Shown in pieces: positions 31,087-64,000 of a stretch of 64,000 nucleotides of DNA. Every line of letters begins with the position of its first letter. The stretch's first letter is position 1. Made by a program: the position numbers and the translations under genes. The DNA lies in IMG/VR virus record IMGVR_UViG_3300009184_000029, positions 158,830 through 222,829 of that record, one strand, 5' to 3'. The notes under the pieces are model-generated. The model was not told the origin of the DNA. It searched no databases and saw nothing but the letters and a program-made list of their open reading frames with translations.

Positions 31087-31090
31087 TTAA

Positions 31091-32068: not shown

Positions 32069-32076
32069 TAATTATA
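32069..32076 (+). promoter_or_regulatory. Putative late promoter variant TAATTATA
   Basis: TAATTAT ends 5 nt before ATG 32081. Confidence 0.4.
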
Positions 32077-32080
32077 GTAT

Positions 32081-32923
32081 ATGTCATTTGTTTATAAAAA
32101 TCCACTAACCGCCATTGTAACACAAGGACCCCAAAGTGTTAAAAGAACACAAACTTTTGGTAATTCTTATAGTGTTAATAATATTGGTGGATACATGGAG
32201 GTGTATACTTTAAACGATTTAGTATACACTATCCCGTCAGGTACGACAGGTATTGTAGAATATTCGGGAAATACCATACCTGTTGATTTTTATAAAGGTA
32301 ATGGTAACCCATGGTCATATAATGTTTTAAGTTTAGGTTCTGATAATATTTCTTCGGGTAGAAGAAGACTTGGTATGTTAGTTTATGTTTATGAACAAGA
32401 CCAAGTTTATCAGTTTCATATTAGCGGTTACACTTCTTTATGGACAGCAGCGACTGCTAGTACTAACTGTGTTAATATTTCTGATTTTGGTACCACGATT
32501 AAAAATAATACTGTTGCAGGTCAAAATTTTATTAACGCTTGGACTGCTAGTACTATTGAGGATGTTAGTGGATACACAAGTGAAACTGCGGTTTGGAGAA
32601 AGTTTAGTACTGGGAATAGTAGTGGGGGAACGGGAATTACTGGGTCAGGTACCACAGGATATATTCCAAAATGGAATTCCAGCTCAAGTCTAACAAACAG
32701 TTTAATCCGAGATAATGGAACCACAGTATCCATAGGCTCCCCATCAAGTGTTGCCGCCATACTTGAGGTAGCCTCAACGTCACAAGGGGTTTTATTCCCT
32801 AGAATGACACAATCGCAAAGATTGGCAATTAGTTCACCAACCCCTGGTTTAATTGTTTATCAAACTGATAGTACTGACGGGTTATATATTTATAAAGTTG
32901 GAGGATGGATACAAATAATATAA
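32081..32923 (+). CDS. Fibre-like structural protein with Bacteroidota-type C-terminal motif
   Basis: RRLGMLVYV, GSGTTGYIPKW, LEVASTSQGVLFPRMTQSQRLAISSPTPGLIVYQTD. Confidence 0.65.
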   Translation: MSFVYKNPLTAIVTQGPQSVKRTQTFGNSYSVNNIGGYMEVYTLNDLVYTIPSGTTGIVEYSGNTIPVDFYKGNGNPWSYNVLSLGSDNISSGRRRLGMLVYVYEQDQVYQFHISGYTSLWTAATASTNCVNISDFGTTIKNNTVAGQNFINAWTASTIEDVSGYTSETAVWRKFSTGNSSGGTGITGSGTTGYIPKWNSSSSLTNSLIRDNGTTVSIGSPSSVAAILEVASTSQGVLFPRMTQSQRLAISSPTPGLIVYQTDSTDGLYIYKVGGWIQII

Positions 32924-32924
32924 T

Positions 32925-38730: not shown

Positions 38731-39321
38731 ATGAAAAATTTAAAAAATACACCCAAGATATTGGGACTAGATGTTTCTACAAAAACAATTGGGTGGGCAT
38801 TATTTGACTTTAAAACTAAAGAATTATTGGAATTAACTCATATTTCTCCTGTTATAAAAAGTAAGTCTGACAATAAAATGGAGGAAATGATACTAAAGTC
38901 TGAAATTTTTAAAAAGAAATTAGACGAGTATAAAAATTTAGGTATTATTAAAGTAGTAATTGAGGAACCTTTATTAAATTCTAATAATGCTTACACCATC
39001 GGAACTCTTTTAAGATATAATACATTAATTACTAAACAAGTATATGATGTACTTGGAGTTGTTCCTGAGTTTGTGTCTACTTATAACTCAAGAAAATTAG
39101 CATTTCCTGAATTAGTTCAAAAAAATAATAAAGATAAATTTGTATTATTTGGTGGTTATCCTAAAGACTGTGATAAAAAACAAATTATTTGGGAATTAGT
39201 CTCTAAAAAAGAACCACAAATTACATGGTTATATACAAAGAATAATACTTTAAAGAAAGAAAACTTTGATATGACCGACGCTTATACCGTTGTTCTTAGT
39301 TATTTAAATTCTAACAATTAA
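38731..39321 (+). CDS. RuvC-like Holliday junction resolvase / RNase H-fold nuclease
   Basis: ILGLDVST..IGWA, VVIEEP, DMTDAY acidic tetrad. Confidence 0.8.
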   Translation: MKNLKNTPKILGLDVSTKTIGWALFDFKTKELLELTHISPVIKSKSDNKMEEMILKSEIFKKKLDEYKNLGIIKVVIEEPLLNSNNAYTIGTLLRYNTLITKQVYDVLGVVPEFVSTYNSRKLAFPELVQKNNKDKFVLFGGYPKDCDKKQIIWELVSKKEPQITWLYTKNNTLKKENFDMTDAYTVVLSYLNSNN

Positions 39322-41704: not shown

Positions 41705-41712
41705 TATAAATA
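41705..41712 (-). promoter_or_regulatory. Putative late promoter TATTTATA (minus strand)
   Basis: Plus strand TATAAATA at 41705-41712; TATTTAT core ends 5 nt before ATG 41700. Confidence 0.55.
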
Positions 41713-41742
41713 AATATAGAAAATGGTAAAACTTTGTGAAGT

Positions 41743-41772
41743 TTGACAAACCTAAGTTTTTAATTATATTTT
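41743..41772 (+). promoter_or_regulatory. Putative early/middle promoter TTGACA-N16-TATATT(TT)
   Basis: Directly upstream of the primase gene. Confidence 0.55.
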
Positions 41773-49067: not shown

Positions 49068-49868
49068 ATGATAAACAAAACAACAGTTATACCCATTAAC
49101 CAAGATGAAGTTAGTTTTTACCTTAAAGACCTTAGAAAGTTGAAGGTAATGACACCTGATAGAGAAAAAGAGCTGTCAAAAAAAATACAATCCCCTAATA
49201 TCTCACAGAAAGAGAAAGATTTAATTGAAAAAGAATTAGTCGAAGGTAATTTAAGATTTGTTATTAGTGTTGCTAAACAGTATCAGAATCAAGGAGTTGA
49301 TTTACCTGACCTTATTGCGGAAGGTAACATTGGATTACTTAAAGCGATTAAGAATTTTGACTGGACTAAAAACCTTAGATTTATATCATACGCAGTATGG
49401 TGGGTTAGACAATCAATCTTACAATGTTTAAATGAACATTCAAGAACTATCCGTATACCTGTGAATGTTATTCAAGACTATCAGAAAGAGAAAAAAGAAA
49501 CGGAAAAAAGTGGTGAGAATATCTCAGATAGATTTTTAAATCTACCATCAACGATTAATTTACAAAGTGAAATTAATGAAGAAGGTGACACATTAATTGA
49601 TTTGATTGTTAATGTGGACGCTCTTAGACCTGACGAATTACTTGATGGTAAAACACAACTAAAAGACGGTTTGATGAATATCCTTAATGTTCTTGATGAA
49701 AGAGAAAGACAAATAGTTGAGGATTATTACGGAATATCTGGAACACCAAGAACACTTGAGGACATCGGGTCTGACTTCAGTCTAACTAAAGAAAGAGTTA
49801 GACAAATCAAAGAGAAGGCTTTGAGAAAATTAAGGAATGAGAGTTCTACTTTGTTTGACTACATTTAA
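49068..49868 (+). CDS. rpoD: RNA polymerase sigma-70 factor, RpoD/SigA family (Bacteroidota-like, no region 1.1)
   Basis: NLRFVISVAKQYQNQG, DLIAEGNIGL, RFISYAVWWVRQSI, LTKERVRQIKEKALRKLR. Confidence 0.92.
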   Translation: MINKTTVIPINQDEVSFYLKDLRKLKVMTPDREKELSKKIQSPNISQKEKDLIEKELVEGNLRFVISVAKQYQNQGVDLPDLIAEGNIGLLKAIKNFDWTKNLRFISYAVWWVRQSILQCLNEHSRTIRIPVNVIQDYQKEKKETEKSGENISDRFLNLPSTINLQSEINEEGDTLIDLIVNVDALRPDELLDGKTQLKDGLMNILNVLDERERQIVEDYYGISGTPRTLEDIGSDFSLTKERVRQIKEKALRKLRNESSTLFDYI

Positions 49869-50233: not shown

Positions 50234-51090
50234 AAAATTGGTTTTCTAATAACTTGAGAAAAATAATAATCACGGCTTTCGTGATTCCGATACTACTGGT
50301 TGCATTTGTTTCAATATCACACGTAACTACTTTTTACGGAATTTCAAATCCAATAACATGGGCAATTTATTTGTCTGTTGGTATTGAAATTGCTGCCTTA
50401 TCAGCACTTGCTGCGGTATCAGTTAATATGGGTCGATTTGTGTATTTACCATTTATTGTTGTGACTATAATCCAAATGTTAGGCAATATTTTCTTTTCTT
50501 TCACATATATTGATGAAACTTCACAACTTTTTACAGATTGGATTAATATGGTTGGTGGATTGTTTGAAAATATGGGTATTGAAAAAACAGATTTAAATAC
50601 ACATAAATCTATACTTTCATTTTTAACAGGAGGATTACTTCCTGTAATTTCATTAACGTTTGCTCACATGCTCGTTAAATTTTCAGAAAATGAAAATAAT
50701 AAAAAAGAAACACAACCTGTTATTGATTTAGAGGAAGTCAGTAAAAAAATTGCAAAAGAAGAATTTGTTGAAGATTCTAAATTAAAATGGAACCCAACTG
50801 ACGAACAGATTGAAATGTTAGAGAAAATACTGAAAGGTAAATACGAGAGTCCTGAGAAAGAAAAAGTTGAAGAAAAACCATACGTTCCATCAGAAGATGA
50901 ACTTAAAAAGTTTGAGGAAGTACTATCTAAGTATGATAATGGTAGTGACTATGATGAAAATCTAAACACCTACCAAAACATAGTTAATGAAAATCAAGAA
51001 CCCACAGAGGTTCAAAAAAAAAATCATGAATCAGACGAAAACATCAATGAGGATTACAAGGTTTTAAATTATTTAGGAAGAAATGATTGA
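50230..51090 (+). CDS. Multi-pass membrane protein with acidic C-terminal tail
   Basis: About four hydrophobic segments; ATGA overlap with upstream gene. Confidence 0.7.
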   Translation: MKNWFSNNLRKIIITAFVIPILLVAFVSISHVTTFYGISNPITWAIYLSVGIEIAALSALAAVSVNMGRFVYLPFIVVTIIQMLGNIFFSFTYIDETSQLFTDWINMVGGLFENMGIEKTDLNTHKSILSFLTGGLLPVISLTFAHMLVKFSENENNKKETQPVIDLEEVSKKIAKEEFVEDSKLKWNPTDEQIEMLEKILKGKYESPEKEKVEEKPYVPSEDELKKFEEVLSKYDNGSDYDENLNTYQNIVNENQEPTEVQKKNHESDENINEDYKVLNYLGRND

Positions 51091-51676
51091 AATTAAAAAA
51101 TGGGGTAAATTAAAACCGTATTCTAAAAGTAAGATAAAACGACAAATAGTTTTATGTTCTACTTTAAGACCGGCAAACTATTATCTACAATCTTTAAAGT
51201 ATCGACATAATGGAGAATACAATAAAGTTCCGAATTATGTTATCACAAGGGATGGTGATATTCTAAATGTATTACCTGATTTATCATATCGTAAATTTTT
51301 TGACGATGATGATGTAAATAAAAATTCAATAATTATAAGTTTAGAAAATTTAGGTTGGTTAAGACAATTACCTTTAAAAATATTTTATACTAATTGGATT
51401 GGAGATATTTATAAAGAGAATGTTTTTGAAAAAAAGTGGAGAGAAAAAGATTTTTGGCAACCTTTTACGGATAAACAAATTGAGAGTCTTTCAAAATTAT
51501 GTGACCACCTTTTTAAAAAATACTCAATAAAAAATAAATTTATAGGACATAATACCAAAGTAGACGGTATCAAAATATTTGAAGGAGTTGTCTGTAAAAG
51601 TAATTTTGATACAAAATACACCGATGTAAGTCCGGCTTTTGATTTTGACTTTTTAAAAAAAATTGAAAATGAATAA
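51083..51676 (+). CDS. N-acetylmuramoyl-L-alanine amidase-like (Amidase_2 fold), catalytic residues apparently altered
   Basis: IVLCST, NYVITRDG, NSIIISLEN, FTDKQIESL..L, FIGHN, DVSPAFD. Confidence 0.7.
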   Translation: MIEIKKWGKLKPYSKSKIKRQIVLCSTLRPANYYLQSLKYRHNGEYNKVPNYVITRDGDILNVLPDLSYRKFFDDDDVNKNSIIISLENLGWLRQLPLKIFYTNWIGDIYKENVFEKKWREKDFWQPFTDKQIESLSKLCDHLFKKYSIKNKFIGHNTKVDGIKIFEGVVCKSNFDTKYTDVSPAFDFDFLKKIENE

Positions 51677-52298
51677 TAGTTACGATGAAATAAAAAACCT
51701 ACTTAAAAAAAGTAGAATGATTGCTCAGTCAAAATACCCTTCAATTAATGAAGGTGTTAATGATATAAAGAAGAAATATCTTATAACTGAGGATGATGGT
51801 ATTATTGATGGTGAATCAGATGTTCAAAATTATGAAGTTGCTAAAAGTATTGAGGGAGAGATTAGGAATGATGACCCAAAAAGAGACGAAGAACAACAAG
51901 GTTATAGAATCTCAGGTGGTATTTTAGTAATTCATGCTACAGATAAAACTGATTTAGAATTAACTACTGACGAAAAAAAATCATTTCAAGAGACTATGGA
52001 TGAATTTGTTGAAGAAGTTTCTGACTTGGTTAATTTTGGGCCTTTAAACATATATTCAAATAATGTTGATTGGTCAGGTAAAATAGTTGATTTAGATATT
52101 GAATTTTTCTATACAATCGGAGAATCTAACGGTATATATATGACAGGTGAGATGTTAAAGATAGATGATAACTTTACCGAAACTATTGAAAAATTACAAA
52201 GTTATTATGAGAAGTTTAAGTCAAAGTGGGCTAAAATTTTGGCGTCAAGAAAGAAAACTAATGAAAAAAAAATAGGTAAAGATGAATCTGAAAGATAA
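51663..52298 (+). CDS. Acidic hypothetical protein, possible internal head protein
   Basis: YDEIKNLL, INEG, LITE motifs; start probably ATG 51669. Confidence 0.6.
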   Translation: MKMNNSYDEIKNLLKKSRMIAQSKYPSINEGVNDIKKKYLITEDDGIIDGESDVQNYEVAKSIEGEIRNDDPKRDEEQQGYRISGGILVIHATDKTDLELTTDEKKSFQETMDEFVEEVSDLVNFGPLNIYSNNVDWSGKIVDLDIEFFYTIGESNGIYMTGEMLKIDDNFTETIEKLQSYYEKFKSKWAKILASRKKTNEKKIGKDESER

Positions 52299-53067
52299 AT
52301 TTATTGCAACATTAGATAGAGCGTTTGGGTCTAATTATGATAAATTAGGACCTAATAGTTTTTTCACAAAGGAAAAAATTAAAAATGCGGTTAATACTGA
52401 AACTAATAAATTCCCAACCTTAAAGTCTGAGTCTAAGAAAAAAGAAACTAAAGAAACTACCTCAAGTGGGTCAAGTGGAGGATTTGTACCTTCTTTACAG
52501 TTTAAAGAAAACAAACAAGTTAAAAAATTAACAGAAGCTGAAAGAACCGCAATGGCGAAGTTAAGAGACTTGTCAAAAAAATATGCTTGTAAAGGTTCTA
52601 AAGATTGTACGGATAAAGATAAGATTGAAGACACTTATGAAGATTTAAAGAAACAATATGCAATTGGTCTTAAAGTTGAGAAAGAGCATAAATCAGGTGA
52701 CCCAAAACAAATTGTCATTGACCATTTATCAGAAGACCCAAACTATTACAGTAAATTAAAAAAGATGGAGTTTAAAGAGATGACATCTTCGGCTTCATCA
52801 GGACAATACACAGGGGCAGCATTTTTAGCAAAATCACAAAGTAAAGAAGACTGGAAACCATCGCAGAAAAAACAATGGAAGGGTGGACAATTTGTTAAAG
52901 TTAAAGATAAATGTAATAAATTCCCATATTGTAATCAGGGAATTGGAGCTTTAGAGTTTTTTGAGAATGAAAATATTAAAGAATCTGTTAAAAACTTATC
53001 AAGACAGTATGGATTATCTAAAGAAACAATTATAAAAATACTATCTGAATCTCTTAAACTTAAATAA
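52282..53067 (+). CDS. DUF5661-like domain protein, possible internal head protein
   Basis: GLKVEKEH...IVIDHLSEDPNYYSKLKKME; duplicated E.TSS.SSG.(F/Y) motif. Confidence 0.6.
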   Translation: MNLKDKFIATLDRAFGSNYDKLGPNSFFTKEKIKNAVNTETNKFPTLKSESKKKETKETTSSGSSGGFVPSLQFKENKQVKKLTEAERTAMAKLRDLSKKYACKGSKDCTDKDKIEDTYEDLKKQYAIGLKVEKEHKSGDPKQIVIDHLSEDPNYYSKLKKMEFKEMTSSASSGQYTGAAFLAKSQSKEDWKPSQKKQWKGGQFVKVKDKCNKFPYCNQGIGALEFFENENIKESVKNLSRQYGLSKETIIKILSESLKLK

Positions 53068-55013: not shown

Positions 55014-55190
55014 ATGGAAACAGTTAGTAAAATCAAAGAACTTACCGAACAGTTAAGCATTGATTCTGAAAAGTTTTTCAAGGGAAATAATTCAGCAGGA
55101 ACTAGAGCTAGAAAAACAGCTCAAGATTTGAAATCATTGTTACAACAATTCAGAGGTGAAATTCTTGAATTCAGAAAAAAAGATGCATAA
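55014..55190 (+). CDS. Histone H1-like (Hc1 family, Bacteroidota 'histone H1') protein, 58 aa; missing from ORF track
   Basis: Hand translation METVSKIKELTEQLSIDSEKFFKGNNSAGTRARKTAQDLKSLLQQFRGEILEFRKKDA; KF..GN.SAGTRARK....LK......R signature; long A-rich leader. Confidence 0.85.
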   Translation: METVSKIKELTEQLSIDSEKFFKGNNSAGTRARKTAQDLKSLLQQFRGEILEFRKKDA

Positions 55191-56762: not shown

Positions 56763-57683
56763 GTGGAAAATTATTATCAAGTTTTAGGGGTATCAGAAAA
56801 TGCAACTCAGGAAGAAATAAAGAAGGCATTTAAGGAAAAGTCTAAAATAACACATCCTGACAAAGGAGGTTCTGAAGAAGAATTCAAAAAAATTAATAAC
56901 GCATACTCAACATTGTCTGACCAAAATAAACGGAATGAATATGATATGAAACAAAAAAATCCTTTTGGGGGAGGTAACCCAAATGGGTTTAATCCATTCG
57001 ATGTATTCAACGATTTTTTCGGACAGAGACAAAGACCTCAAAGAAAAGTTAGAGATAGAATTATAAATCTTAGTATTGGTGTTTTAGATTGTTTAAGAGA
57101 GACTGAAAAAACAGTAAATTACCAAATAGAAAAAGATTGTAATAGTTGTAATGGTTCTGGAGGGGAAAGAGTTAATTGTGAACACTGTGGAGGGTCAGGA
57201 CATATTACACAACAAGTTGGCAACAGTTTCTTCAGTAACATAATTCAAACTCCATGTAACCAATGTGGGGGTAGAGGATTTAAACTAAAGAACCTGTGTT
57301 ATGTATGTAATGGGGTTGGTAAACAAAGAGAGTTTAAGACAACTAAATTCCAAATACCTAAAGATATACAGGATGGACAATTTATTAAATTATATGGTCA
57401 AGGAGACATCTCACAAGGACAGGCAGGGGACTTGTTAATTAAATTTGAAATGGCTCCACAAGATGGATTTGAAAGAATTAATAATGATTTAGTGTATAAT
57501 CATTTTTTCACGTCTATAGAAGATTTAAATAAGAGTGAAATTGTGGTTAATTCTTATAATGAGAAAATGAGTATTAAGTTGCCTAAAACTATAGATACCT
57601 CAGTACCATTAAGAGTTAAAAATAAAGGTATTTCAGGTGGGGATTTATTTATTAGAATGAACCTAAAGTTTGAAAGAACTTAG
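56763..57683 (+). CDS. dnaJ: DnaJ co-chaperone (class A)
   Basis: J-domain with HPD, G/F region, four CxxCxGxG repeats, C-terminal GDL motifs; GTG start. Confidence 0.93.
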   Translation: MENYYQVLGVSENATQEEIKKAFKEKSKITHPDKGGSEEEFKKINNAYSTLSDQNKRNEYDMKQKNPFGGGNPNGFNPFDVFNDFFGQRQRPQRKVRDRIINLSIGVLDCLRETEKTVNYQIEKDCNSCNGSGGERVNCEHCGGSGHITQQVGNSFFSNIIQTPCNQCGGRGFKLKNLCYVCNGVGKQREFKTTKFQIPKDIQDGQFIKLYGQGDISQGQAGDLLIKFEMAPQDGFERINNDLVYNHFFTSIEDLNKSEIVVNSYNEKMSIKLPKTIDTSVPLRVKNKGISGGDLFIRMNLKFERT

Positions 57684-57822
57684 ATAGTTTTTCATAAATA
57701 AAAGTTGCAAATATATACGACGTATATATAACAGATATTAAAGTATAAAGGACCAATAGGGTCCTTTTTTTTGGGATAAAGAAAAAATCTTTACAAGATT
57801 CACACTTAAAGTCTAACTTCAT
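57652..57822 (-). CDS. Small CxxC + transmembrane protein (56 aa), not in ORF track
   Basis: Hand translation MKLDFKCESCKDFFFIPKKRTLLVLYTLISVIYTSYIFATFIYEKLSKFFQTLGSF. Confidence 0.45.
   Translation of the reverse strand: MKLDFKCESCKDFFFIPKKRTLLVLYTLISVIYTSYIFATFIYEKLSKFFQTLGSF
57747..57772 (+). terminator. Rho-independent terminator after dnaJ
   Basis: AAAGGACC-aatag-GGTCCTTT with T8 run. Confidence 0.65.
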
Positions 57823-57886
57823 AAATTAATGCATTTGCCAATGTTGTTTTGCCAGCACCTGGCTGACCTGTAAACCAATAAATCAT
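57806..57886 (-). pseudogene. cysC: Truncated adenylylsulfate (APS) kinase N-terminus
   Basis: MIYWFTGQPGAGKTTLANALIYEVRL* carries the CysC-type W.TG..GAGKTT P-loop; ATGA-coupled to the sulfotransferase stop. Confidence 0.7.
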
Positions 57887-58707
57887 ATATTCTTTTGATA
57901 ATTAAAAATTTCGTAAAACCACTGATAATTGTTATAAATCCATTCAGTCACATCCGCACCCAAAACTTTATTCGCAGTTGATGGAGTTAATTCTAACGAC
58001 TTTCTAATTGTATGGTCACCAAACATTCCATAAACTTCATCATCTTCTTTAGTTACTTGTTCAATATTATCAAAGTCGTGATTAAAAAATGGAATACCCA
58101 AATATTCATATATCCTTGTCATTGTCATTTCAGGATATAAACATAAGTCTTCATATCGGATAAACAAAATTTTTTCATTTATTCCTTGTCTAAAAATTTC
58201 AGATAACCTCTCAATCGCCATTCCAACAGGTTGTGAGTTTGCCCAAATGTCAATTCTTTTTGGTGTTGATGTACCTTTCAGTTCGTTATGATTAACAATC
58301 CCAATATCTTTGTATTGATTTTTTCTAAAGTTCTTTTCCATTGAACAAAAGATATCACGTAAATCTCTAACCATACAAATGATTTTAGGTTCAGGAAATA
58401 TTTCATTTAAAAATCCATAATGAACTCCCCAACCTCTACTTTTATCCACAACATATTTTTTATCTGTAATTGTGTTGAAGAAACCTTCAACACCATTTTT
58501 ACAAAAAGACAAATAACCTTGTTTCATCAATTCAGTATCCTGAGCTTTAAATTCAGGTGATGTAGAATAGTTAGCCCTTGCAGCATAAATTAATTCCAAC
58601 ACACCACTTGTTGGTGTTGCATAAATGTCAGGATTTTGAGCCAATATGTTTTGTAACATTGTACTACCAGCTCTTGGTAATGAACTTTGAAAGAATAATT
58701 TTTCCAT
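57883..58707 (-). CDS. PAPS-dependent sulfotransferase
   Basis: 5'-PSB SLPRAGSTML, DKSRGW, 3'-PB MVRDLRDIFCS, RYEDL. Confidence 0.88.
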   Translation of the reverse strand: MEKLFFQSSLPRAGSTMLQNILAQNPDIYATPTSGVLELIYAARANYSTSPEFKAQDTELMKQGYLSFCKNGVEGFFNTITDKKYVVDKSRGWGVHYGFLNEIFPEPKIICMVRDLRDIFCSMEKNFRKNQYKDIGIVNHNELKGTSTPKRIDIWANSQPVGMAIERLSEIFRQGINEKILFIRYEDLCLYPEMTMTRIYEYLGIPFFNHDFDNIEQVTKEDDEVYGMFGDHTIRKSLELTPSTANKVLGADVTEWIYNNYQWFYEIFNYQKNI

Positions 58708-59093
58708 TATATAATTTTTTTAACACTTTTCCAATAATCGGGTCCTCCATACGACGTACAGATTTCTTCACCCGCTTCAATAATACGATTTGACACGAAA
58801 TAATAAAGAGCACTACTTGAGTCGCAAGTCCAAAACGCATTATTATTTTCACTATGATTATAGATACATCCATAACCCAATGGAATGGCATAATGTGTTG
58901 GTTTATGACCACATGGATATGCAAATCTATATTTTAAAAATATATCATAATCTTGACCTAAATTAATTTTGAAGAATATTGCATAACAAACTTCAATAAT
59001 TTCATTAGGTTCAATTCGTTCAATAGCAAAAACCCCCAATCCATGAATTGGGGATGCTTTAACTTCTATCTTTTTAGGTATTGGGACATTCAT
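58707..59093 (-). CDS. SET-domain protein (putative lysine methyltransferase)
   Basis: SPIHGLGVFA, IYNHS..NA, I..GEEICTSYG. Confidence 0.88.
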   Translation of the reverse strand: MNVPIPKKIEVKASPIHGLGVFAIERIEPNEIIEVCYAIFFKINLGQDYDIFLKYRFAYPCGHKPTHYAIPLGYGCIYNHSENNNAFWTCDSSSALYYFVSNRIIEAGEEICTSYGGPDYWKSVKKII

Positions 59094-59965
59094 TATTCTT
59101 CAGAAAGAGAATTGATAACATCATTTACATTAAAAATTTCATCTTCATTGAAATATGGAAATTCAATTGGTTCTCCCAAAATATTAAACTTATACAAATA
59201 TGAATTTTTTAATTCGGGTTTTTTAGTGAAAGGATTGTTAACGATATTATGATTGTTTTCATATCCAAATACTATGGGAGAATTTACAATCCATAAAACT
59301 GTTGAGTTAAGTCCTAATGCAGTTGCAGTATGTTGAGCAAAACTATCCATAAATAAACGCTTTGAACTCATCCCAATAACTGACGCAATCGCTCTGAAAT
59401 TATCTGTTATAGATACTGTATCTTTCAAAGATATTTGGTCTTCTCTTCTAATATGGAAAATGGTATAAGCAAATTTAAACTTATTAACAACTTGTTGAGC
59501 GATGTTATCAGGGATGTCTCTCGCCCAAGAGTATTTCAAATCTTGTTCAATACCTCCATTTGTTTGAATAACCATAATAGGTTTATCAGTTGCGTATTTA
59601 TTAGAATAAAATTTAAATTCTCTATCCGTTAAATAAACTTTTGGTTGTTCTCCTTCATACTCTAAACCGAACAATTTACACCAAGTTTCAATTACGTGTT
59701 CTTTTTGTGTTATATGTTCAGCTTCCAAGTAGGGGTCGTGAGCAAATAGTTTGAAATCTTTACCATCAATATAATCAGAATAGAAATATTTGTGTTCACC
59801 GAAAGCAAATGCTCGGTCCACAAAAGGATTATTCATAAACACATCAGGATATCCTGATACTACAATTAGATTACAATCAGGATATGTTTTTTTAATTACT
59901 TCGGCAACTGCGGTTGCGATTACACATTTACCAATACCACCATTTATTTGAAAAATAATATTCAT
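59093..59965 (-). CDS. Glycosyltransferase, GT9 (heptosyltransferase)-like fold
   Basis: GGIGKCVIATA (GxGD variant), NNPFVD, FMDSFAQH..TALG. Confidence 0.72.
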   Translation of the reverse strand: MNIIFQINGGIGKCVIATAVAEVIKKTYPDCNLIVVSGYPDVFMNNPFVDRAFAFGEHKYFYSDYIDGKDFKLFAHDPYLEAEHITQKEHVIETWCKLFGLEYEGEQPKVYLTDREFKFYSNKYATDKPIMVIQTNGGIEQDLKYSWARDIPDNIAQQVVNKFKFAYTIFHIRREDQISLKDTVSITDNFRAIASVIGMSSKRLFMDSFAQHTATALGLNSTVLWIVNSPIVFGYENNHNIVNNPFTKKPELKNSYLYKFNILGEPIEFPYFNEDEIFNVNDVINSLSEE

Positions 59966-60024
59966 AATTAATTTTTTTAAAAAAAATAATTTAAGAATAT
60001 TATTGGTAAATAGAAATCCAATAA

Positions 60025-60258
60025 TTAAAAATAAATTTGACTAATAAAATCTTGAATTGACGATGTTATTTGACCGTCAAGAGTAAATTCACCATTTTGA
60101 AAGAAGTATAAACTATTCCCTAATTCAATCTCACAAGAATTATCACTATCTATATTGTACCCATTTTGATACATATCAAATGTAAAATAATGGTCTTGAT
60201 TATTAAAATTTAATCCGTTTGGTATTTTATTAATTTCTAGCATATTTTTAAATTTCAT
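60025..60258 (-). CDS. Small hypothetical protein downstream of fibre gene (possible fibre chaperone)
   Basis: Position after fibre gene; start may be at MLEINK (60243). Confidence 0.55.
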   Translation of the reverse strand: MKFKNMLEINKIPNGLNFNNQDHYFTFDMYQNGYNIDSDNSCEIELGNSLYFFQNGEFTLDGQITSSIQDFISQIYF

Positions 60259-63200
60259 TTATTGAGTAATACGATACAAATGTTGTATCTGACGCACTTG
60301 AATTAAGTATACTATACATAACAAATTGATTAACAGTCCAGTCAATTGTTAAAGTTGTAACAGCACTTGTACTTGTATTAACATCATCTTGAACGTTGGT
60401 TATTGATGTATTAAACACTTCCGTTGTTCCTCCCTTAACTGCCGCAGTTCTTGATAAATCAGTATAAAGAATTGTTAATCCACTATTAAATTGACCGACT
60501 ATTTGAGCTCCGGTTAAGTTTAGAGTTGTATTAACACTTATTCTGTAGTTGGCTGCGGCATTTACTCCTACTTTACGGTACCTGGCTTTAAATAAAACAA
60601 TATCTCCGGTTGTAATTGTATTTGCAGGAATTAATACCGATTGTACTAATTGATAAGAACCTGTCGTTGTGTTTCCAGAACTATCAACCCCACTTGAAAT
60701 TTTTGTAACTATATTTCCACCTCTTGATGATATTGTTACCGCGGATATTGTTGTAGCAGAAATTGTTGTCGCAGACATTGTTGTTGCAGATATAGTTCCT
60801 GTTATAATATTGTTTGTGTAAAGTGTACACGCTGATGTCGCATTTAATCCACAACCAATCGCGAATGAATAGTTACCTGTAACAGTGTTACCACTACCAC
60901 CTAATATACCCGAATACTGACCACTAACTATGTTACGGGTGCCACCACCTATGAATGAATATGAACATCTAGCACTATTACAAAGACCTCCACCTATTGA
61001 TGAATATACTGCAAGAGTTCCCGACGTACCTGATATAGTATTATTACCACCTCCTAAAATTGCTCCGGTAGTATCATAAATACGATTACAATAACCTCCA
61101 CTAATAGTTGAATGACTTGTTTGACTACTACTACCAATAGAAGTTATAAGATTACATCCTCCTCCACCAATAACACTAGTGTAAATGTATCCTCCAACCT
61201 GATTTTGAATACAATTTTTCCATCCAGAAGGAATTCCTATATAAAATCCACCATTAATTATATTTTGGTCTCCACCACCAATAAACGAGTTTGAATTAAT
61301 TGAACCAATGTTGTTATTTGACCCTCCACCAACAAATGAATAATTTCCATTTGAAACATTTGATTGACCCCCAACGATAACGTTACAATTACCGTAAGTA
61401 GAATTTGATTGTCCCGCGCCTATGAAATTTCCTCCACTACCATAATAACTTGAGCTAGTAGTATTTTGGTAACCACCTACAATTACACTTCTATCGTTTG
61501 GATAGTATTGACTTGATGTATGACAATTTAAGACACCATTACCAATAAATGAGTAACTACTGTCAGTTTTGTTACAAAACCCTGTAGCTATAAAATTACC
61601 GGTCCCACACGGAATTAAATTACAAAACCCTCCACCAATTATTGAATTAGTTCCGTTATTGATGTTACAATATCCATTAAGTATTGTACTACATCCACCT
61701 GCAACAGAATTCTTAAATCCCCCACCAATAAATTGTCCAATAGGAACTGACAGATAATTACCGCAACCTCCTCCAATAAACCCAAAATTACCGGCAATTG
61801 TATTACCTGAACCACCACCAATGAATGAATAACTACAACAAACGTTATTTCTAACACCTGAACTTATTGAGCTAAAACAAGAAGTTGATGCGGTCATCGT
61901 ATTACCCGTACCACCGCCAATAAATGAATACGCTCCACCGGCAATATTACAAAGTCCTCCAGCTATGGTAGATGTATTACCGCTTGAGACGTTGAGACAA
62001 CCCCCACCAATAAATGAATATGTCCCTGAATTGGTATTACCTGAACCACCAGTTATTTTTCTTATCGTTGCAGTTGTTGCAGATATTGTATTTGCACTTA
62101 AACCTCCTGTGAATATAGTTGCTCCTGATACGGTTCCACCTGTAAATGTTCCACCTCCACCTGTTGAACTTATTGTATAGTTACCACTACCATTATTTGT
62201 AATTGTTATATTAGTTCCTTGAGTTAATCCACTAACAGGTAAGTTATTGTATGTTGTTGCAGATATTGTGTTAGCACTTAACCCACCTGTTATTATGTTA
62301 TTAGTATATAACGTACAGTTAGCCGTAGCATTTAATCCACAACCAATAGCCGAAGAAAAACTACCACTAACAGTATTACCACTACCTCCGAGTGCCATAC
62401 CGTAACTACCACTAACAGTATTACCTCTACCTGTTCCAATAAAACTAGAAGAACCACCTGATGTAATAATATTTAAAGTGCCACCTCCAATAAATGAACA
62501 GTTACCACCCGCAGTATTTTTACCTCCACCAACAACTGACGATGTTACTCCGCTAGTAATATTTTGAAGTCCCCCTCCAATAAATGAATAAGAGCAACAA
62601 GAAGTATTTAAACCACCTCCAACAACACTAGCGGAACTTCCACACGATTTATTAGCAATACCACCACCCACAAAAGAATAGGTACTATAAGTATTATTTA
62701 ATGCACCACCAACAACTACTGATGCCAACCCTGATGCGGTATTACCTGTACCAGCCAACGATGCCGAAAAATCAGCAGTTGCATTATTTCCAACCCCACA
62801 TCTAATTGACGATGTAGTACATGAACCCTGAATTATGACAGGACTTACAGGTGTATAATTTGTCAATAAACCGTTAGTACTTGAACAAACTGCTTGTCCT
62901 GAAGATAACGCACTTGAGTAGATTGACCCACAAGAACAAAAATCATTTGTATAAAATGTATTAGGACAAGATGCCACAATATTACATCCAAACACACCAA
63001 TAAATGAATCGGACACAAAATTATTCATACCTCCAATTATCACCGAATTAGACATTTTTGCAGTACCAGAAATAGAATTTAAACATCCATTAAGGATTGT
63101 GGAAAACTGTGGCCCAAAAGATGGATAACCTGAAATTGTGTTTTGATTTCCCCCACCAATAAATGAATAATATCCCGACGAAGTATTTAAAGTTCCTCCA

Positions 63201-64000
63201 CCAACAAATGAATACGACCCACTTGTGGTATTACAATATCCGCCGACAACACTTGATGTATTCCCACTTGCAATGTTAGCTGAACCTCCTCCTACGGTTG
63301 AGTAATTACCACTTGCTGTGTTACCTACCCCACCACCTACGGTTGAGTTGAGTCCAGTTGAGTTGTTTTTATATCCACCACCAATAGTTGAATATTTACT
63401 ACTTGAGGTGTTACAATACCCCCCACTTACGGTTGAGTTATAGTTACTTGATGTATTACAACGTCCACCACCTACGGTTGAATAAAATCCACTCGATGTA
63501 TGAAAACCTCCTCCTCCGATTGTTGAAAAATAATTGCTTGACGTATTACTTCCACCTCCACCAACAAATGAATAATTACCTGATGAAGTATTTGAAGTTC
63601 CCCCTCCAATAATCGAATATGTCCCACTTGCTGTGTTACCACCCCCACCTCCAACAAATGAGTAATTACCCGAAGCGGTATTACCCGAACCTCCCAAAGA
63701 AGCCCCATAATCACCCTTAGCAGTATTATTTACCCCACATCTAACAGTTGAGTTAATTCCTATACCTGTAATGTATAAAACACTTGGTAAATCTATATTG
63801 TTTGAAAATGGTGTTATTCCATAAGAATAATGTTGGGTACCCTCAGTAACTAAAGTTATTGAATGTGATTGATTACCTGTATTTGTTGCTCTTACTTTTA
63901 CAACAATTCTGTCAGTTGTATTTATTGATGAACCCGAATAATATCCATCCGTCAATTGCATTGATGGATTTGGGGAATTTGTAGTTACTGGTGTCGGGTC
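60248..64000 (-). CDS. Giant Gly/Ser/Asn/Cys 15-aa-repeat (beta-helix/YadA-head-like) fibre protein; 5'-truncated by window
   Basis: Frame is open from nt 64000 (DPTPVTTNSPNPSM...); three blocks of SGNYSF(I/V)GGGxxNT repeats. Confidence 0.75.
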   Translation of the reverse strand, partial: DPTPVTTNSPNPSMQLTDGYYSGSSINTTDRIVVKVRATNTGNQSHSITLVTEGTQHYSYGITPFSNNIDLPSVLYITGIGINSTVRCGVNNTAKGDYGASLGGSGNTASGNYSFVGGGGGNTASGTYSIIGGGTSNTSSGNYSFVGGGGSNTSSNYFSTIGGGGFHTSSGFYSTVGGGRCNTSSNYNSTVSGGYCNTSSSKYSTIGGGYKNNSTGLNSTVGGGVGNTASGNYSTVGGGSANIASGNTSSVVGGYCNTTSGSYSFVGGGTLNTSSGYYSFIGGGNQNTISGYPSFGPQFSTILNGCLNSISGTAKMSNSVIIGGMNNFVSDSFIGVFGCNIVASCPNTFYTNDFCSCGSIYSSALSSGQAVCSSTNGLLTNYTPVSPVIIQGSCTTSSIRCGVGNNATADFSASLAGTGNTASGLASVVVGGALNNTYSTYSFVGGGIANKSCGSSASVVGGGLNTSCCSYSFIGGGLQNITSGVTSSVVGGGKNTAGGNCSFIGGGTLNIITSGGSSSFIGTGRGNTVSGSYGMALGGSGNTVSGSFSSAIGCGLNATANCTLYTNNIITGGLSANTISATTYNNLPVSGLTQGTNITITNNGSGNYTISSTGGGGTFTGGTVSGATIFTGGLSANTISATTATIRKITGGSGNTNSGTYSFIGGGCLNVSSGNTSTIAGGLCNIAGGAYSFIGGGTGNTMTASTSCFSSISSGVRNNVCCSYSFIGGGSGNTIAGNFGFIGGGCGNYLSVPIGQFIGGGFKNSVAGGCSTILNGYCNINNGTNSIIGGGFCNLIPCGTGNFIATGFCNKTDSSYSFIGNGVLNCHTSSQYYPNDRSVIVGGYQNTTSSSYYGSGGNFIGAGQSNSTYGNCNVIVGGQSNVSNGNYSFVGGGSNNNIGSINSNSFIGGGDQNIINGGFYIGIPSGWKNCIQNQVGGYIYTSVIGGGGCNLITSIGSSSQTSHSTISGGYCNRIYDTTGAILGGGNNTISGTSGTLAVYSSIGGGLCNSARCSYSFIGGGTRNIVSGQYSGILGGSGNTVTGNYSFAIGCGLNATSACTLYTNNIITGTISATTMSATTISATTISAVTISSRGGNIVTKISSGVDSSGNTTTGSYQLVQSVLIPANTITTGDIVLFKARYRKVGVNAAANYRISVNTTLNLTGAQIVGQFNSGLTILYTDLSRTAAVKGGTTEVFNTSITNVQDDVNTSTSAVTTLTIDWTVNQFVMYSILNSSASDTTFVSYYSINEI
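60800..63720 (-). repeat. Three arrays of degenerate 45-bp (15-aa) coding repeats
   Basis: Recurrent CCACCAATAAATGAATA / CCACCTACGGTTGA at ~45-nt period on the plus strand. Confidence 0.85.

What the first reader, a model, noticed from the sequence alone, without database searches (positions are those of the whole stretch)
57806..64000. Fibre gene co-oriented with a modification cassette: GT9-like glycosyltransferase, SET methyltransferase, sulfotransferase and APS kinase remnant
Seen: a tightly packed minus-strand run (1-nt overlaps at 59093 and 58707, ATGA at 57883) directly downstream of a giant Ser/Thr/Gly-rich fibre gene. Established: GT9 folds transfer sugars, sulfotransferases use PAPS, APS kinase makes PAPS, and SET domains methylate lysines. 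Inference: a dedicated pathway that decorates virion fibres with sulfated glycans (mimicry of sulfated polysaccharides that Bacteroidota bind, or shielding). Alternatively it modifies the host LPS for superinfection exclusion.
Basis: partly seen in the sequence, partly recalled or inferred. Interest (0 to 1): 0.7.

Follow-up and report, generated by a model that had tools for sequence, protein, structure and literature searches.

The report
Tail-fibre-linked glycosylation and sulfation cassette
A large freshwater phage carries, directly behind a giant sticky-fibre gene, a tight operon of a sugar-adding enzyme, a protein-methylating enzyme and a sulfate-adding enzyme. The same fibre-plus-enzymes module recurs in dozens of related phages, so these phages probably decorate their own tail fibres chemically; sulfation of a phage particle has never been demonstrated.

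Summary
On the minus strand lie a fibre gene cut by the contig end (1604 aa in a near-identical contig; UspA1/YadA-head-like), a 77-aa ORF, a 290-aa GT9-fold glycosyltransferase, a minimal SET lysine methyltransferase, a PAPS-type sulfotransferase and a 26-codon APS-kinase stump. The stated 1-nt and ATGA overlaps are correct.

Relatives show this is a conserved module. Among 43 dereplicated lineages carrying the glycosyltransferase:
- 40/43 have the sulfotransferase.
- 36/39 have a homologous fibre just upstream.
- 34/40 have a full APS kinase.
- 29/40 have a small adenylyltransferase.
- 27/39 have a DUF2061 membrane protein.
- SET is confined to the window's clade (3/43).

The linkage survives gene-order changes. 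It recurs with unrelated fibre types, including a cultured SAR11 podophage. The window's strain lost the APS kinase by a recent deletion (breakpoint 57824) that is polymorphic in lake metagenomes.

The nearest characterised relatives of all three enzymes include protein modifiers: TibC, chlorovirus vSET and tyrosylprotein sulfotransferases.

Best reading (confidence about 0.5): a late-operon cassette that post-translationally decorates the adjacent tail fibre. Whether sulfate goes onto sugar or onto tyrosine is unresolved, and modification of host envelope glycan remains a serious rival. Nothing here is biochemically shown.

The parts
60248..64000 (-). 3' part of the giant fibre gene: the C-terminal 1250 of 1604 codons, with the start lying beyond the contig end. 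It is a Gly/Ser/Thr/Asn-rich protein with almost no charged residues, carrying YadA/UspA1-head-like repeats.
   Evidence: - ORF calls.
- Full length of 1604 aa in the near-identical contig L003.
- UspA1 head structure 3pr7 matched at E = 1.3e-26.
- Composition: G 17, S 14, T 13, N 10, Y 5.2, K 1.2 and D+E 2.4 %.
- Atlas leads are YadA_head phage proteins.
- The N-terminal 175 aa (outside the window) are 67% identical to the product of window ORF 32081..32923.
60025..60258 (-). 77-aa ORF of unknown function. It overlaps the fibre stop codon by 11 nt and occupies the slot where relatives carry one or two ~110-aa ORFs.
   Evidence: - ORF calls.
- No Pfam hit.
- Found again only in L011, at 95% identity.
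- The ~110-aa ORF clusters at the same position occur in 59 of 80 loci.
59093..59965 (-). 290-aa GT-B glycosyltransferase of a divergent GT9-like family. The conserved N-terminal motif is GGxGK and the C-terminal motif is DSxxxH.
   Evidence: - AF2 model with pLDDT 81.
- Foldseek PDB top matches are all GT9: 3tov 7e-14, 1psw, WaaC and TibC.
- 12/41 family members hit PF01075.
- 1060 50%-identity cluster representatives.
- Fusions to FkbM methyltransferase and GT25 domains.
- Two homologues are named ADP-heptose:LPS heptosyltransferase by JGI.
58707..59093 (-). 128-aa minimal SET-domain protein lysine methyltransferase (vSET-like).
   Evidence: - PF00856 at 37.9 bits.
- Closest solved structure is PBCV-1 vSET (1n3j), E = 3.7e-11.
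- The GxG, YNHS and GEEICTxY motifs are invariant among 16 homologues.
- Present in only 7 of 80 related loci, always between the GT and the sulfotransferase.
57883..58707 (-). 274-aa PAPS-dependent sulfotransferase (Sulfotransfer_3), with the 5'-PSB-like PRAGST loop and the RDLRD motif.
   Evidence: - PF13469 at 81.5 bits and phrog_27463 at 145 bits.
- TPST1/2 are the best solved relatives by sequence (8e-7) and by fold (4e-8).
- Weak match to NoeE.
- Two 100%-identical contigs inside this gene occur in a lake metatranscriptome library (weak evidence).
57806..57886 (-). APS (adenylyl-sulfate) kinase stump of 26 codons. The first 21 codons are the Walker-A N-terminus of the kinase and the last 5 are unrelated sequence.
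   Evidence: - Sequence read.
- PF01583 positions 3-23 at 15.5 bits.
- 100% identity over 21 aa to the L005 kinase.
- The full-length kinases of relatives score 66-70 bits on PF01583 and E = 5.7e-18 to a solved APS kinase.
57823..57825 (.). Deletion or recombination breakpoint at which homology to the APS kinase of relatives stops.
   Evidence: - DNA alignment with L005 and L007.
- Contigs of runs X1-X4 carry the truncated junction, while co-occurring contigs run on from 57824 into full-length kinase sequence.
- In run X6, a contig identical over 57824-58197 continues into the full kinase.
57747..57767 (.). 8-bp hairpin flanked by an A-run and a T-run, lying between the convergent cassette and dnaJ. 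Probably a bidirectional terminator.
   Evidence: Terminator scan and sequence read. Consensus match only.
56763..57683 (+). Full-length DnaJ (J domain, zinc-finger domain, C-terminal domain), convergent with the cassette. It marks the cassette's downstream boundary in this strain and is not part of the module in any relative.
   Evidence: Pfam PF00226, PF00684 and PF01556. No DnaJ was found within 10 kb of the module in 80 related loci.
28909..32923 (+). Paralogous fibre set in the tail and baseplate region: 725-aa, 325-aa and 280-aa ORFs. These are homologous to the two genes upstream of the cassette-linked fibre and to that fibre's N-terminal domain.
   Evidence: - tblastn of the L003 proteins against the genome: 34%, 60% and 67% identity.
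- A gp6-like baseplate wedge lies at 12344..14182.
- A third paralogous set lies at genome 124-127 kb.

Best explanation
**What it is.** This is a tail-fibre modification operon of a freshwater T4-like jumbo phage whose host is probably a Bacteroidota. It is transcribed together with the fibre gene.

**Proposed mechanism.**
- The GT9-fold glycosyltransferase would add sugar to Ser/Thr of the Gly/Ser/Thr/Asn/Tyr-rich, nearly uncharged, YadA/UspA1-head-like fibre. The precedent is the GT9-fold heptosyltransferases TibC/AAH, which hyperglycosylate beta-helical adhesins in the cytoplasm.
- The TPST-like sulfotransferase would use PAPS to add sulfate, either to that sugar or directly to fibre tyrosines.
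- The vSET-like enzyme would methylate lysines of the fibre or of another virion protein.

**The ancestral module and what was lost.** The ancestral module also supplied the donor through an APS kinase, a small adenylyltransferase and a DUF2061 membrane protein. In this strain a recent deletion removed those genes, leaving a 26-codon kinase stump, so PAPS must come from the host.

**Shown versus inferred.**
- Shown: gene content, folds and families, conserved synteny, and the deletion.
- Inferred: the acceptor (the fibre), the chemistry (which sugar, which residue), and co-transcription.
For: **1. Operon anatomy.** The genes are co-oriented, with 1-nt, 1-nt and 4-nt overlaps and an 11-nt overlap with the fibre stop codon.

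**2. Conserved linkage.**
- In 80 IMG/VR loci with the GT (57-74% identity), the sulfotransferase is present in 73, a homologous fibre in 67-70 and the APS kinase in 63.
- After dereplication to 43 lineages the counts are 40/43, 36/39 and 34/40.
- The commonest gene outside the module, the tail sheath, appears in only 21-26 of the 80 loci, and no locus has DnaJ.

**3. Linkage survives rearrangement.**
- L060/65/66/70 have kinase, NTase, GT and sulfotransferase in that order, facing a convergent fibre.
- L087/L088 and the marine virus AG-345-L05 have sulfotransferase before GT.

**4. The GT family follows unrelated fibres.**
- A collagen/Peptidase_S74 fibre in L103, followed by a GT at 63% identity and then SET.
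- gp48 'putative tail fiber' followed by gp49 in cultured Pelagibacter podophage HTVC112P, with overlapping stop and start.

**5. The nearest characterised relatives include protein modifiers.**
- TibC is among the GT9 fold hits (PMC4358343).
- TPST1/2 are the best solved relatives of the sulfotransferase.
- vSET is the best solved relative of the SET protein.

**6. The fibre looks like a virion part.**
- Its N-terminal domain and its two upstream partners have paralogues in the baseplate and tail region.
- In relatives the module lies a few kb from the tail sheath gene.

**7. Fusions and neighbours in relatives are glycan- or protein-modifying.** They include FkbM, GT25, GT1, extra Sulfotransfer_4 genes, a radical SAM enzyme and a PF11397 GlcNAc-transferase.
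Against: - No biochemical or proteomic evidence exists.
- GT9 enzymes are mostly LPS-core heptosyltransferases, and the sulfotransferase also weakly resembles NoeE and heparan 3-OSTs, which act on carbohydrate.
- Adjacency of tailspike genes and O-antigen-modifying genes is known in temperate phages, so synteny alone does not pick out the fibre as the acceptor.
- The related loci were selected by similarity to one protein and share ancestry, so the counts are not independent events.
- Distant sulfotransferases in cyanophages S-SKS1 and S-SCSM1 are not next to fibres.
- Some SET homologues sit in non-fibre contexts, and the fibre has only about 1.2% lysine.
- The GT lacks the BAHT-specific beta-barrel and iron finger.
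- The GT's own sequence does not reach the GT9 Pfam threshold.
- No promoter or late-transcription evidence was obtained.
Confidence: 0.5

Rival explanations
1. **Host-envelope remodelling.** The GT9-like enzyme and the sulfotransferase would act on the infected cell's LPS, LOS or capsule precursors at the inner membrane. This would alter or mask the receptor that the neighbouring fibre recognises, giving superinfection exclusion or preventing progeny from adsorbing to debris. The genes would travel with the fibre because receptor-binding and receptor-modifying specificities co-evolve.
For: - The GT9 fold's main known role is LPS-core heptosylation; WaaC and WaaF are among the top hits.
- JGI names two homologues as LPS heptosyltransferases.
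- Fusion partners GT25 and FkbM are typical of LPS and O-antigen pathways.
- There is a weak NoeE-like signal, i.e. a carbohydrate sulfotransferase.
- A DUF2061 membrane protein belongs to the ancestral module.
- From general knowledge, tailspike-adjacent O-antigen conversion genes are known in P22-like phages.
Against: - A SET protein-lysine methyltransferase inside the operon has no role in glycan remodelling.
- The sulfotransferase's best relatives are protein-tyrosine sulfotransferases.
- The arrangement is translationally coupled with a structural (presumably late) gene, not with early genes.
- The GT family follows three unrelated fibre types in phages of very different hosts, whose envelopes differ.
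Confidence: 0.27
2. **Host-protein or other virion-protein modification, unrelated to the fibre.** The enzymes would be independent 'morons' parked in a variable island behind the fibre gene. For example, SET might methylate a host or phage nucleoid protein such as the phage's own Hc1-like histone, and the sulfotransferase might act on a small molecule.
For: - Regions behind tail-fibre genes are hot spots for accessory genes.
- Relatives carry varied extra genes there, including GNAT, an HNH endonuclease, a radical SAM enzyme and a chitinase-like gene.
- SET is sporadic (3/43 lineages) and elsewhere sits beside thymidylate synthase or lysis genes.
- The phage encodes a lysine-rich Hc1-like protein at 55014..55190.
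- CurM and olefin-synthase sulfotransferases (small-molecule acceptors) are also fold neighbours.
Against: - The GT, sulfotransferase and kinase core is far more conserved than any other neighbour, and it stays together through rearrangements.
- Stop/start overlaps argue for co-expression.
- The SET homologue in L103 is again wedged between the fibre-linked GT and another GT.
Confidence: 0.13
3. **Decaying, non-functional cassette.** With the PAPS supply genes deleted, the sulfotransferase (and perhaps its neighbours) would be on the way to loss in this strain.
For: - The APS kinase is reduced to 26 codons, and the adenylyltransferase and DUF2061 genes are absent from the 222-kb record.
- A clade of close relatives (L008-L011) also lacks them.
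Against: - The GT, SET and sulfotransferase ORFs are intact, with all family motifs conserved.
- L008-L011 keep an intact sulfotransferase without any kinase, which suggests that host PAPS suffices.
- The truncated form is found in at least four runs from several studies and years.
- RNA-library contigs match the sulfotransferase gene.
Confidence: 0.1

Closest known systems
Bacterial autotransporter heptosyltransferases (BAHT: TibC, AAH) with their adhesin substrates TibA and AIDA-I (PMC4358343)
   Same: - A GT9-type GT-B catalytic fold; TibC chains are among the top Foldseek hits.
- The enzyme gene sits next to the gene of a Ser/Thr-rich, repeat-built beta-solenoid adhesin, which it hyperglycosylates in the cytoplasm.
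   Different: - The phage enzyme is 290 aa and starts directly with the Rossmann strand, so it has no N-terminal beta-barrel and no iron-finger Cys motif. The beta-hairpin thumb and dodecamer formation were not examined.
- Sequence identity is only 9-14%.
- The substrate would be a virion fibre of YadA/UspA1-head type, not a type V secreted passenger.
- The donor sugar is unknown.
LPS-core heptosyltransferases WaaC and WaaF, and the GT9 protein 3tov (CAZy GT9, Pfam PF01075)
   Same: - Best structural matches, at E 7e-14 to 1e-9 and TM 0.55-0.69.
- 12 of 41 family members reach PF01075 hits.
- The C-terminal DSxxxH...G motif resembles the GT9 nucleotide-sugar motif (recalled from memory, not tested).
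   Different: - The window protein does not itself match PF01075.
- It is about 30-60 residues shorter.
- It has a nearly invariant Lys in the GGxGK motif where, from memory, GT9 has its catalytic Asp; this was not tested.
- Its genomic context is phage tail fibres, not LPS clusters.
Virion glycosylation cassettes of mycobacteriophages (Freeman et al. 2023, cited in PMC12619734)
   Same: Phage-encoded glycosyltransferases placed beside structural genes whose products (capsid, tail tube) they glycosylate.
   Different: - Different GT families, different target proteins and different hosts.
- No sulfotransferase, PAPS pathway or SET enzyme.
- That system is experimentally proven, whereas this one is not.
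Predicted bacterial operons combining dioxygenases, sulfotransferases and PAPS synthetases with tail-collar or collagen-like proteins (Iyer et al. 2010, PMC2938197)
   Same: A computational prediction that a sulfotransferase plus a PAPS supply modifies a co-encoded fibre-like, glycine-rich protein.
   Different: - Those are bacterial loci built around hydroxylases (hydroxylation followed by sulfation).
- Here the cassette sits in phage genomes, is built around a GT9-like enzyme, and has no dioxygenase in the window.
- The sulfotransferase family is TPST-like Sulfotransfer_3.
Tyrosylprotein sulfotransferases (TPST1/2; bacterial RaxST, recalled from memory)
   Same: - Best solved relatives of the window's sulfotransferase, by sequence and by fold.
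- A PAPS-binding 5'-PSB loop and a 3'-PB motif are present (read from the sequence).
   Different: - Only 17-21% identity and TM about 0.5-0.6.
- Carbohydrate and polyketide sulfotransferases are only about 100-fold worse in E-value.
- The fibre lacks the acidic residues that flank TPST target tyrosines.
Chlorovirus vSET (PBCV-1 A612L, H3K27 methyltransferase)
   Same: A minimal ~120-130-aa, virus-encoded SET-only protein. It is the best solved match, E = 3.7e-11, and the catalytic NH and Tyr motifs are intact.
   Different: The host is a bacterium without histones. The gene sits in a fibre-modification operon, and the substrate is unknown.

Membership tests
Glycosyltransferase family 9 (Pfam PF01075 / CAZy GT9) | Sequence match to the PF01075 profile above the gathering score (22 bits) | tested here: not met
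   - The window protein has no Pfam hit at E <= 0.1 and no NCBIfam hit.
- 12 of 41 diverse homologues match PF01075 at E <= 0.1, best E 6.5e-9. One fusion protein reaches 22.9 bits.
- Homology to GT9 is therefore transitive only.
Glycosyltransferase family 9 (Pfam PF01075 / CAZy GT9) | GT-B two-Rossmann fold closest to the heptosyltransferases | tested here: met
   The AF2 model has pLDDT 81.2 and pTM 0.83. Foldseek PDB ranks 1-9 are all GT9 (3tov, 1psw, WaaC), at E 7e-14 to 8e-8 and TMq 0.54-0.69.
Glycosyltransferase family 9 (Pfam PF01075 / CAZy GT9) | Catalytic residues and use of an ADP-heptose donor | not tested
   No residue-level structural alignment or ligand modelling was available. 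The nearly invariant residues are G9, K13, D207, S208 and H212. Mapping these onto WaaC residues would rest on memory only.
Bacterial autotransporter heptosyltransferases (BAHT, TibC/AAH) | N-terminal beta-barrel, beta-hairpin thumb and iron-finger motif; dodecamer (PMC4358343) | tested here: not met
   - The protein is 290 aa, and the model begins with Rossmann strand E2-7 followed by helix 11-27, so there is no N-terminal barrel.
- Only two conserved cysteines (C14, C96) occur among close relatives, and none is conserved across the wider family.
- The beta-hairpin thumb and the oligomeric state were not tested.
SET-domain protein lysine methyltransferases (PF00856) | Profile match above the gathering score, plus GxG, NHS and catalytic-Tyr motifs | tested here: met
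   - 37.9 bits against a cut-off of 22.4, covering model positions 1-105 of 105.
- vSET (1n3j) matched at E = 3.7e-11.
- G18/G20, Y78-N79-H80, E109-E110 and Y115 are invariant or nearly so in 16 homologues.
PAPS-dependent sulfotransferases (PF13469 Sulfotransfer_3 / PF00685) | Profile match above the gathering score, and the sulfotransferase fold with PAPS-binding loops | tested here: met
   - PF13469 at 81.5 bits (cut-off 27) and PF00685 at 51.4 bits (cut-off 22).
- AF2 model pLDDT 84.
- The top 45 or more Foldseek hits are nearly all PAPS- or PAP-binding sulfotransferase-fold proteins.
- P11, R12, G14, S15, T16, R114 and S122 are invariant, and D115 and D118 nearly invariant, in 18 homologues.
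Tyrosylprotein sulfotransferases (TPST) | Specific relationship to TPST rather than to other sulfotransferases, and a tyrosine-peptide acceptor | tested here: inconclusive
   - TPST1/2 are the best hits by sequence (8e-7, 31.8 bits) and by fold (4e-8).
- Stf9, CurM and heparan 3-OSTs follow at 6e-7 to 1e-5 with similar TM scores.
- NCBIfam gives a weak NoeE hit.
- The acceptor is not testable with these tools.
Adenylyl-sulfate (APS) kinase (PF01583, CysC) | Full kinase domain (P-loop, APS-binding region, lid) | tested here: not met
   - Only 21 residues (model positions 3-23, 15.5 bits, below the cut-off of 21.1) remain in the window.
- The orthologous gene in relatives is full length, at 138-166 aa and 66-70 bits.
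- The window copy is a remnant, not a kinase.
Trimeric autotransporter adhesin head repeats (YadA/UspA1 head) as used in phage fibres | Sequence similarity to a solved head domain, and a repeat pattern | tested here: met
   - UspA1 head 3pr7 matched at E = 1.3e-26 over fibre residues 469-649.
- GGxxxN[TS]-type repeats were counted.
- Atlas leads are YadA_head proteins in viruses and PTL_trimer proteins in Bacteroidota (lead only).
- No Pfam hit for the window part.
- Trimer formation was not tested.
T4-like (gp23-type capsid) myoviruses | gp23-family major capsid protein and a gp6-like baseplate wedge | tested here: met
   - PF07068 at 211.7 bits, at genome 76.8-78.3 kb.
- phrog_6 and phrog_219 baseplate wedge at window 12344..14182.
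- The sheath homologue is found by tblastn at genome 144.6 kb.

The most novel reading that the evidence does not exclude
A large, environmentally abundant group of aquatic phages would sulfate their own tail fibres. The sulfate would go either onto O-linked sugars laid down by a fibre-dedicated GT9-like enzyme or directly onto tyrosines via a TPST-like enzyme. The phages would use a self-encoded PAPS supply: the APS kinase, and perhaps a minimal adenylyltransferase acting as an unrecognised ATP sulfurylase.

This would be the first sulfated virion protein of a prokaryotic virus. It would also mean that many viral 'cysC sulfur-assimilation AMGs' in viromes are in fact donor-supply genes for virion decoration. 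In the window's clade a vSET-like enzyme would add lysine methylation, giving a three-fold post-translational code on a receptor-binding fibre.
Probability: 0.3. Interest if true: 0.82.

Novelty: new variant of a known kind. Interest (0 to 1): 0.62.

Why it matters
**Gaps in current knowledge.**
- The role of phage-encoded sulfotransferases is stated to be unknown (PMC10580990).
- Phage virion glycosylation is so far proven only in mycobacteriophages.
- No paper found by the full-text searches describes a sulfated phage particle.

**What this adds.**
- The module is common. The GT family alone has about 1060 50%-identity clusters.
- It is tightly tied to receptor-binding fibres across phages of Bacteroidota-like and SAR11 hosts.
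- If the fibre is the acceptor, host recognition in abundant aquatic phages depends on post-translational chemistry that is invisible to sequence-based host-range prediction.
- It would also change how APS-kinase 'auxiliary metabolic genes' are read in viromes.

**Testability.**
- The naturally polymorphic deletion of the PAPS-supply genes offers a ready-made comparison between strains.
- The hypothesis can be tested by co-expression and mass spectrometry without culturing the host.

Tried and rejected
- **Complex prediction.** The GT-like protein against a 201-aa fibre repeat segment gave no answer (score 0.00). This is not evidence either way.
- **Profile search of the GT family against PDB sequences.** No hit. 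The fold search was needed instead.
- **Megablast of the region against cultured phages.** No match.
- **PHROGs on the fibre, its N- and C-terminal parts and neighbouring tail-region ORFs.** Nothing informative.
- **T4 late-promoter motif TATAAATA.** Not enriched and absent from the cassette. The sigma-70-type scan was at background level.
- **Wrapping the contig end onto its start to complete the fibre gene.** Rejected. The read-through is fortuitous and the record is a 76%-complete linear fragment. The true 5' end came from contig L003.
- **The 56-aa ORF at 57652..57822 as the kinase remnant.** Rejected. It has no P-loop, it overlaps the dnaJ end and the hairpin, and it was not called in L003.
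- **DNA hypermodification as the role of the GT.** Considered and set aside. A sulfotransferase, APS kinase and SET, together with constant fibre adjacency, do not fit.
- **Scan of genome contigs with the diverse alignment.** Failed for lack of conserved stretches. It was repeated with the closer alignment.
- **First structure job.** It was re-run without that row.

Full report
**1. Where the window lies.** The window is the last 64 kb of a 222,829-bp linear IMG/VR virus record that CheckV rates 76% complete.
- The genome encodes a gp23-type major capsid protein (PF07068, 211.7 bits), a gp6-like baseplate wedge and a sheath homologue. It is therefore a T4-like myovirus of jumbo size.
- The nearest capsid relatives, at 42-46% identity, are an uncultured 484-kb phage, Microcystis phage Mel-JY01 and the Flavobacterium 'immuto' phages.
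- The sequence occurs in many freshwater metagenomes.
- Relatives of the cassette were found in 11 MAG bins, of which 8 are Bacteroidota, mostly Chitinophagaceae. This is weak, binning-based support for a Bacteroidota host.
- A described lineage of freshwater jumbo phages with DnaJ and predicted Bacteroidota hosts ('moraphages', PMC12619734) looks similar. Membership was not tested, and that paper does not mention sulfotransferases or SET.

**2. The observation.** The minus-strand run is exactly as described.
- The ORFs are: fibre 60248..64000 (open at the contig end), a 77-aa ORF at 60025..60258 (11-nt overlap with the fibre stop), a 290-aa ORF at 59093..59965, a 128-aa ORF at 58707..59093, a 274-aa ORF at 57883..58707, and a 26-codon ORF at 57806..57886.
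- The overlaps between them are 1 nt, 1 nt and ATGA.
- An 8-bp hairpin with flanking A and T runs (57747-57767) separates the run from a convergent full-length dnaJ gene (56763..57683).
- A near-identical 229-kb JGI contig (L003) extends further. It shows the fibre gene to be 1604 codons long, preceded by two more co-oriented genes.

**3. The parts.**

*Fibre.*
- Composition is G 17, S 14, T 13, N 10, Y 5.2, K 1.2 and D+E 2.4 %.
- Residues 469-649 match the Moraxella UspA1 head structure at E = 1.3e-26.
- Language-model neighbours are YadA_head phage proteins (lead only).
- The fibre's first 175 residues and the two upstream proteins have paralogues inside the window's tail and baseplate region (28909..32923) and at genome 124-127 kb. 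The phage therefore has three fibre sets sharing an attachment domain, and only this one is followed by enzymes.

*290-aa protein.*
- It has no direct Pfam or NCBIfam hit.
- Its AF2 model (pLDDT 81) has GT9 structures as its nine best PDB matches, followed by the protein heptosyltransferase TibC.
- 12 of 41 diverse homologues hit PF01075.
- The family is large, with 1060 50%-identity clusters.
- Members occur fused to FkbM methyltransferase and GT25 domains.

*SET.* It scores 37.9 bits on PF00856, its best solved relative is chlorovirus vSET, and its catalytic motifs are invariant.

*Sulfotransferase.*
- It scores 81.5 bits on PF13469.
- Its best solved relatives are tyrosylprotein sulfotransferases, by sequence (8e-7) and by fold (4e-8).
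- Carbohydrate and polyketide sulfotransferases are not far behind, and there is a weak NoeE signal. The acceptor class therefore remains open.

*Kinase stump.* The first 21 residues are identical to the N-terminus of the full APS kinase of relative L005, which scores 66.5 bits on PF01583 and E = 5.7e-18 against a solved APS kinase.

**4. Relatives.**
- Scanning IMG/VR with the GT family gave 80 loci at 57-74% identity.
- Within 10 kb of the GT, 73 loci have the sulfotransferase, 67-70 a homologous fibre (nearly always immediately upstream and co-oriented), 63 a full APS kinase overlapping the sulfotransferase stop, 52 a 130-aa NMNAT-like adenylyltransferase, 48-50 a DUF2061 membrane protein and 59 a ~110-aa ORF between the fibre and the GT. 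SET occurs in only 7.
- After collapsing to 43 lineages (<90% GT identity) and counting only loci long enough to judge, the figures are: sulfotransferase 40/43, fibre 36/39, kinase 34/40, adenylyltransferase 29/40, DUF2061 27/39 and SET 3/43.
- The commonest gene outside the module, the tail sheath, is seen in 21-26 loci, and dnaJ in none. The module is thus more conserved than its surroundings.
- The module survives rearrangement. L060-type loci run kinase, adenylyltransferase, GT, sulfotransferase, facing a convergent fibre. L087/L088 and the marine virus AG-345-L05 have the sulfotransferase before the GT.
- The GT family also follows fibres of other kinds. One is a collagen/Peptidase_S74 fibre in L103, followed by a GT at 63% identity and then SET. 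Another is in the cultured SAR11 podophage HTVC112P, where gp49 (25% identity, E = 9e-14, same GGxGK and DSxxxH motifs) starts at the stop of gp48 'putative tail fiber'.
- Some relatives' islands carry extra modification genes. L022 has two Sulfotransfer_4 genes, a Sulfotransfer_3-like gene and a radical SAM enzyme between the GT and the sulfotransferase. L005 has a PF11397 GlcNAc-transferase.
- Counter-examples exist. Distant sulfotransferases of cyanophages S-SKS1 and S-SCSM1 are not fibre-linked, and two of four SET contexts examined are not fibre-linked.

**5. The deletion.**
- Homology to the kinase genes of L005 and L007 stops at window position 57824.
- Logan contigs from four runs of several studies carry the truncated junction. 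Contigs of co-occurring relatives run on from 57824 into kinase sequence.
- In run X6, a contig identical over 57824-58197 continues into the full kinase. The deletion is therefore recent and polymorphic.
- No other APS kinase, adenylyltransferase or DUF2061 gene is present in the 222-kb record.
- The clade L008-L011 also lacks them while keeping an intact sulfotransferase, which suggests that host PAPS can suffice.
- Two 100%-identical contigs within the sulfotransferase gene occur in a lake metatranscriptome library. This is weak evidence of expression, because DNA carry-over is not excluded.

**6. Interpretation.**
- The best-supported reading is a fibre-dedicated post-translational modification operon.
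- The supporting argument has five strands: operon anatomy; synteny that outlasts rearrangement and changes of fibre type; the presence of a strictly protein-directed enzyme (SET) inside the operon; the TPST-like affinity of the sulfotransferase; and the precedent of GT9-fold enzymes (TibC/AAH) that hyperglycosylate Ser/Thr-rich beta-solenoid adhesins encoded next to them (PMC4358343).
- The phage enzyme is not itself a BAHT, because it lacks the N-terminal barrel and the iron finger.
- A fibre with almost no charged residues would gain charge and solubility from sulfate. This is inference only.
- The main rival is remodelling of host LPS or capsule. It fits the GT9/GT25/FkbM affinities and cannot be excluded by synteny, since receptor-binding and receptor-modifying genes can travel together.
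- Prior art: sulfation of tail-collar or collagen-like proteins by co-encoded sulfotransferases and PAPS synthetases was predicted for bacterial operons (PMC2938197). The role of phage sulfotransferases is described as unclear (PMC10580990). Host-dependent methylation of phage tail proteins has been reported (PMC13445384, abstract seen).
- The specific phage module described here was not found in the literature searches.

**7. Verdict.**
- The finding is real and its components are correctly named. The caveat is that 'GT9-like' holds by fold and transitive homology only.
- The chemistry (sulfated glycan versus sulfotyrosine) and the acceptor remain unproven.
- Novelty: a new variant of known kinds (virion glycosylation cassettes; adhesin-plus-GT9 pairs).
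- Interest: 0.62.

Noticed in passing
L005:4658-5056 and L005:5053-5496 (relatives; absent from the window): In most relatives the APS kinase is followed by a ~130-aa HxGH adenylyltransferase and a DUF2061 membrane protein. The adenylyltransferase's best matches are NMN adenylyltransferases, and PF01467 is weak. It could be a minimal ATP sulfurylase that completes a phage PAPS pathway, or it could make the ADP-sugar donor for the GT9-like enzyme. Neither idea was tested.
   Followed up: partly
L022:10815-16530: One relative carries an expanded island between the GT and the sulfotransferase: two Sulfotransfer_4 genes, a Sulfotransfer_3-like gene, a radical SAM enzyme and two unknown ~296-aa genes. 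An FkbM methyltransferase follows directly after the sulfotransferase.
   Followed up: partly
window 55014..55190 (+): A 58-aa ORF carries a precomputed Pfam hit to Hc1 (PF07432, the chlamydial histone-like protein). This lysine-rich nucleoid protein in a phage is a conceivable alternative substrate for the SET enzyme.
   Followed up: no
window 56763..57683 (+): The phage encodes a full-length three-domain DnaJ (J domain, CxxCxGxG zinc-finger domain, C-terminal domain). A weak second DnaJ-like match lies at genome ~57 kb. This resembles the chaperone-carrying freshwater 'moraphages' (PMC12619734).
   Followed up: partly
window 28909..34352 (+), genome 124-127 kb, and the contig end: There are three paralogous fibre sets that share adaptor proteins and an N-terminal fibre domain. 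Only one set is followed by modification enzymes.
   Followed up: partly
genome 76.8-78.3 kb (L086:1297-3099): The gp23-type major capsid protein is 600 aa, and cultured homologues align only in two pieces covering about 55% of it. This suggests a large insertion domain.
   Followed up: no
window 49068..49868 (+), 51083..51676 (+), 52282..53067 (+): A sigma-70 region 2/4 protein, an Amidase_2 (probable endolysin) and a DUF5661 protein lie upstream of the dnaJ region, according to the precomputed Pfam hits on contig L003.
   Followed up: no
L112:1-383 (Pelagibacter phage HTVC112P gp46): In the SAR11 podophage, a 'putative RTX toxin acyltransferase family protein' (a protein lysine acyltransferase family) lies just upstream of the tail protein, tail fibre and GT-like genes. 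It is another candidate tail-protein-modifying enzyme.
   Followed up: no
L001:4843-14564 (Marine virus AG-345-L05): This marine Kyanoviridae-like virus has the following run of genes: a large GT1-like protein, a 161-aa ORF, a 916-aa T/G/S/Y-rich protein, a prolyl-hydroxylase-like 2OG oxygenase, a sulfotransferase, a 111-aa ORF, the GT9-like gene and a carbamoyltransferase. This is a differently ordered version of the fibre-plus-modification idea. The domain calls here were made by eye and were not scanned.
   Followed up: partly
window 39311..41479 (-) and 40001-42000: There is a strong local GC-skew peak (0.36) around a 722-aa Thr/Ser-rich minus-strand ORF, which matches the same PHROG (15511) as neighbouring fibre-region proteins.
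   Followed up: no
genome position 1-200 (contig start): The record begins inside a gene whose translation looks like a histidine-kinase-type ATPase (DxGxG...GxGLG). The contig ends do not overlap, so the record is not circularly closed.
   Followed up: no
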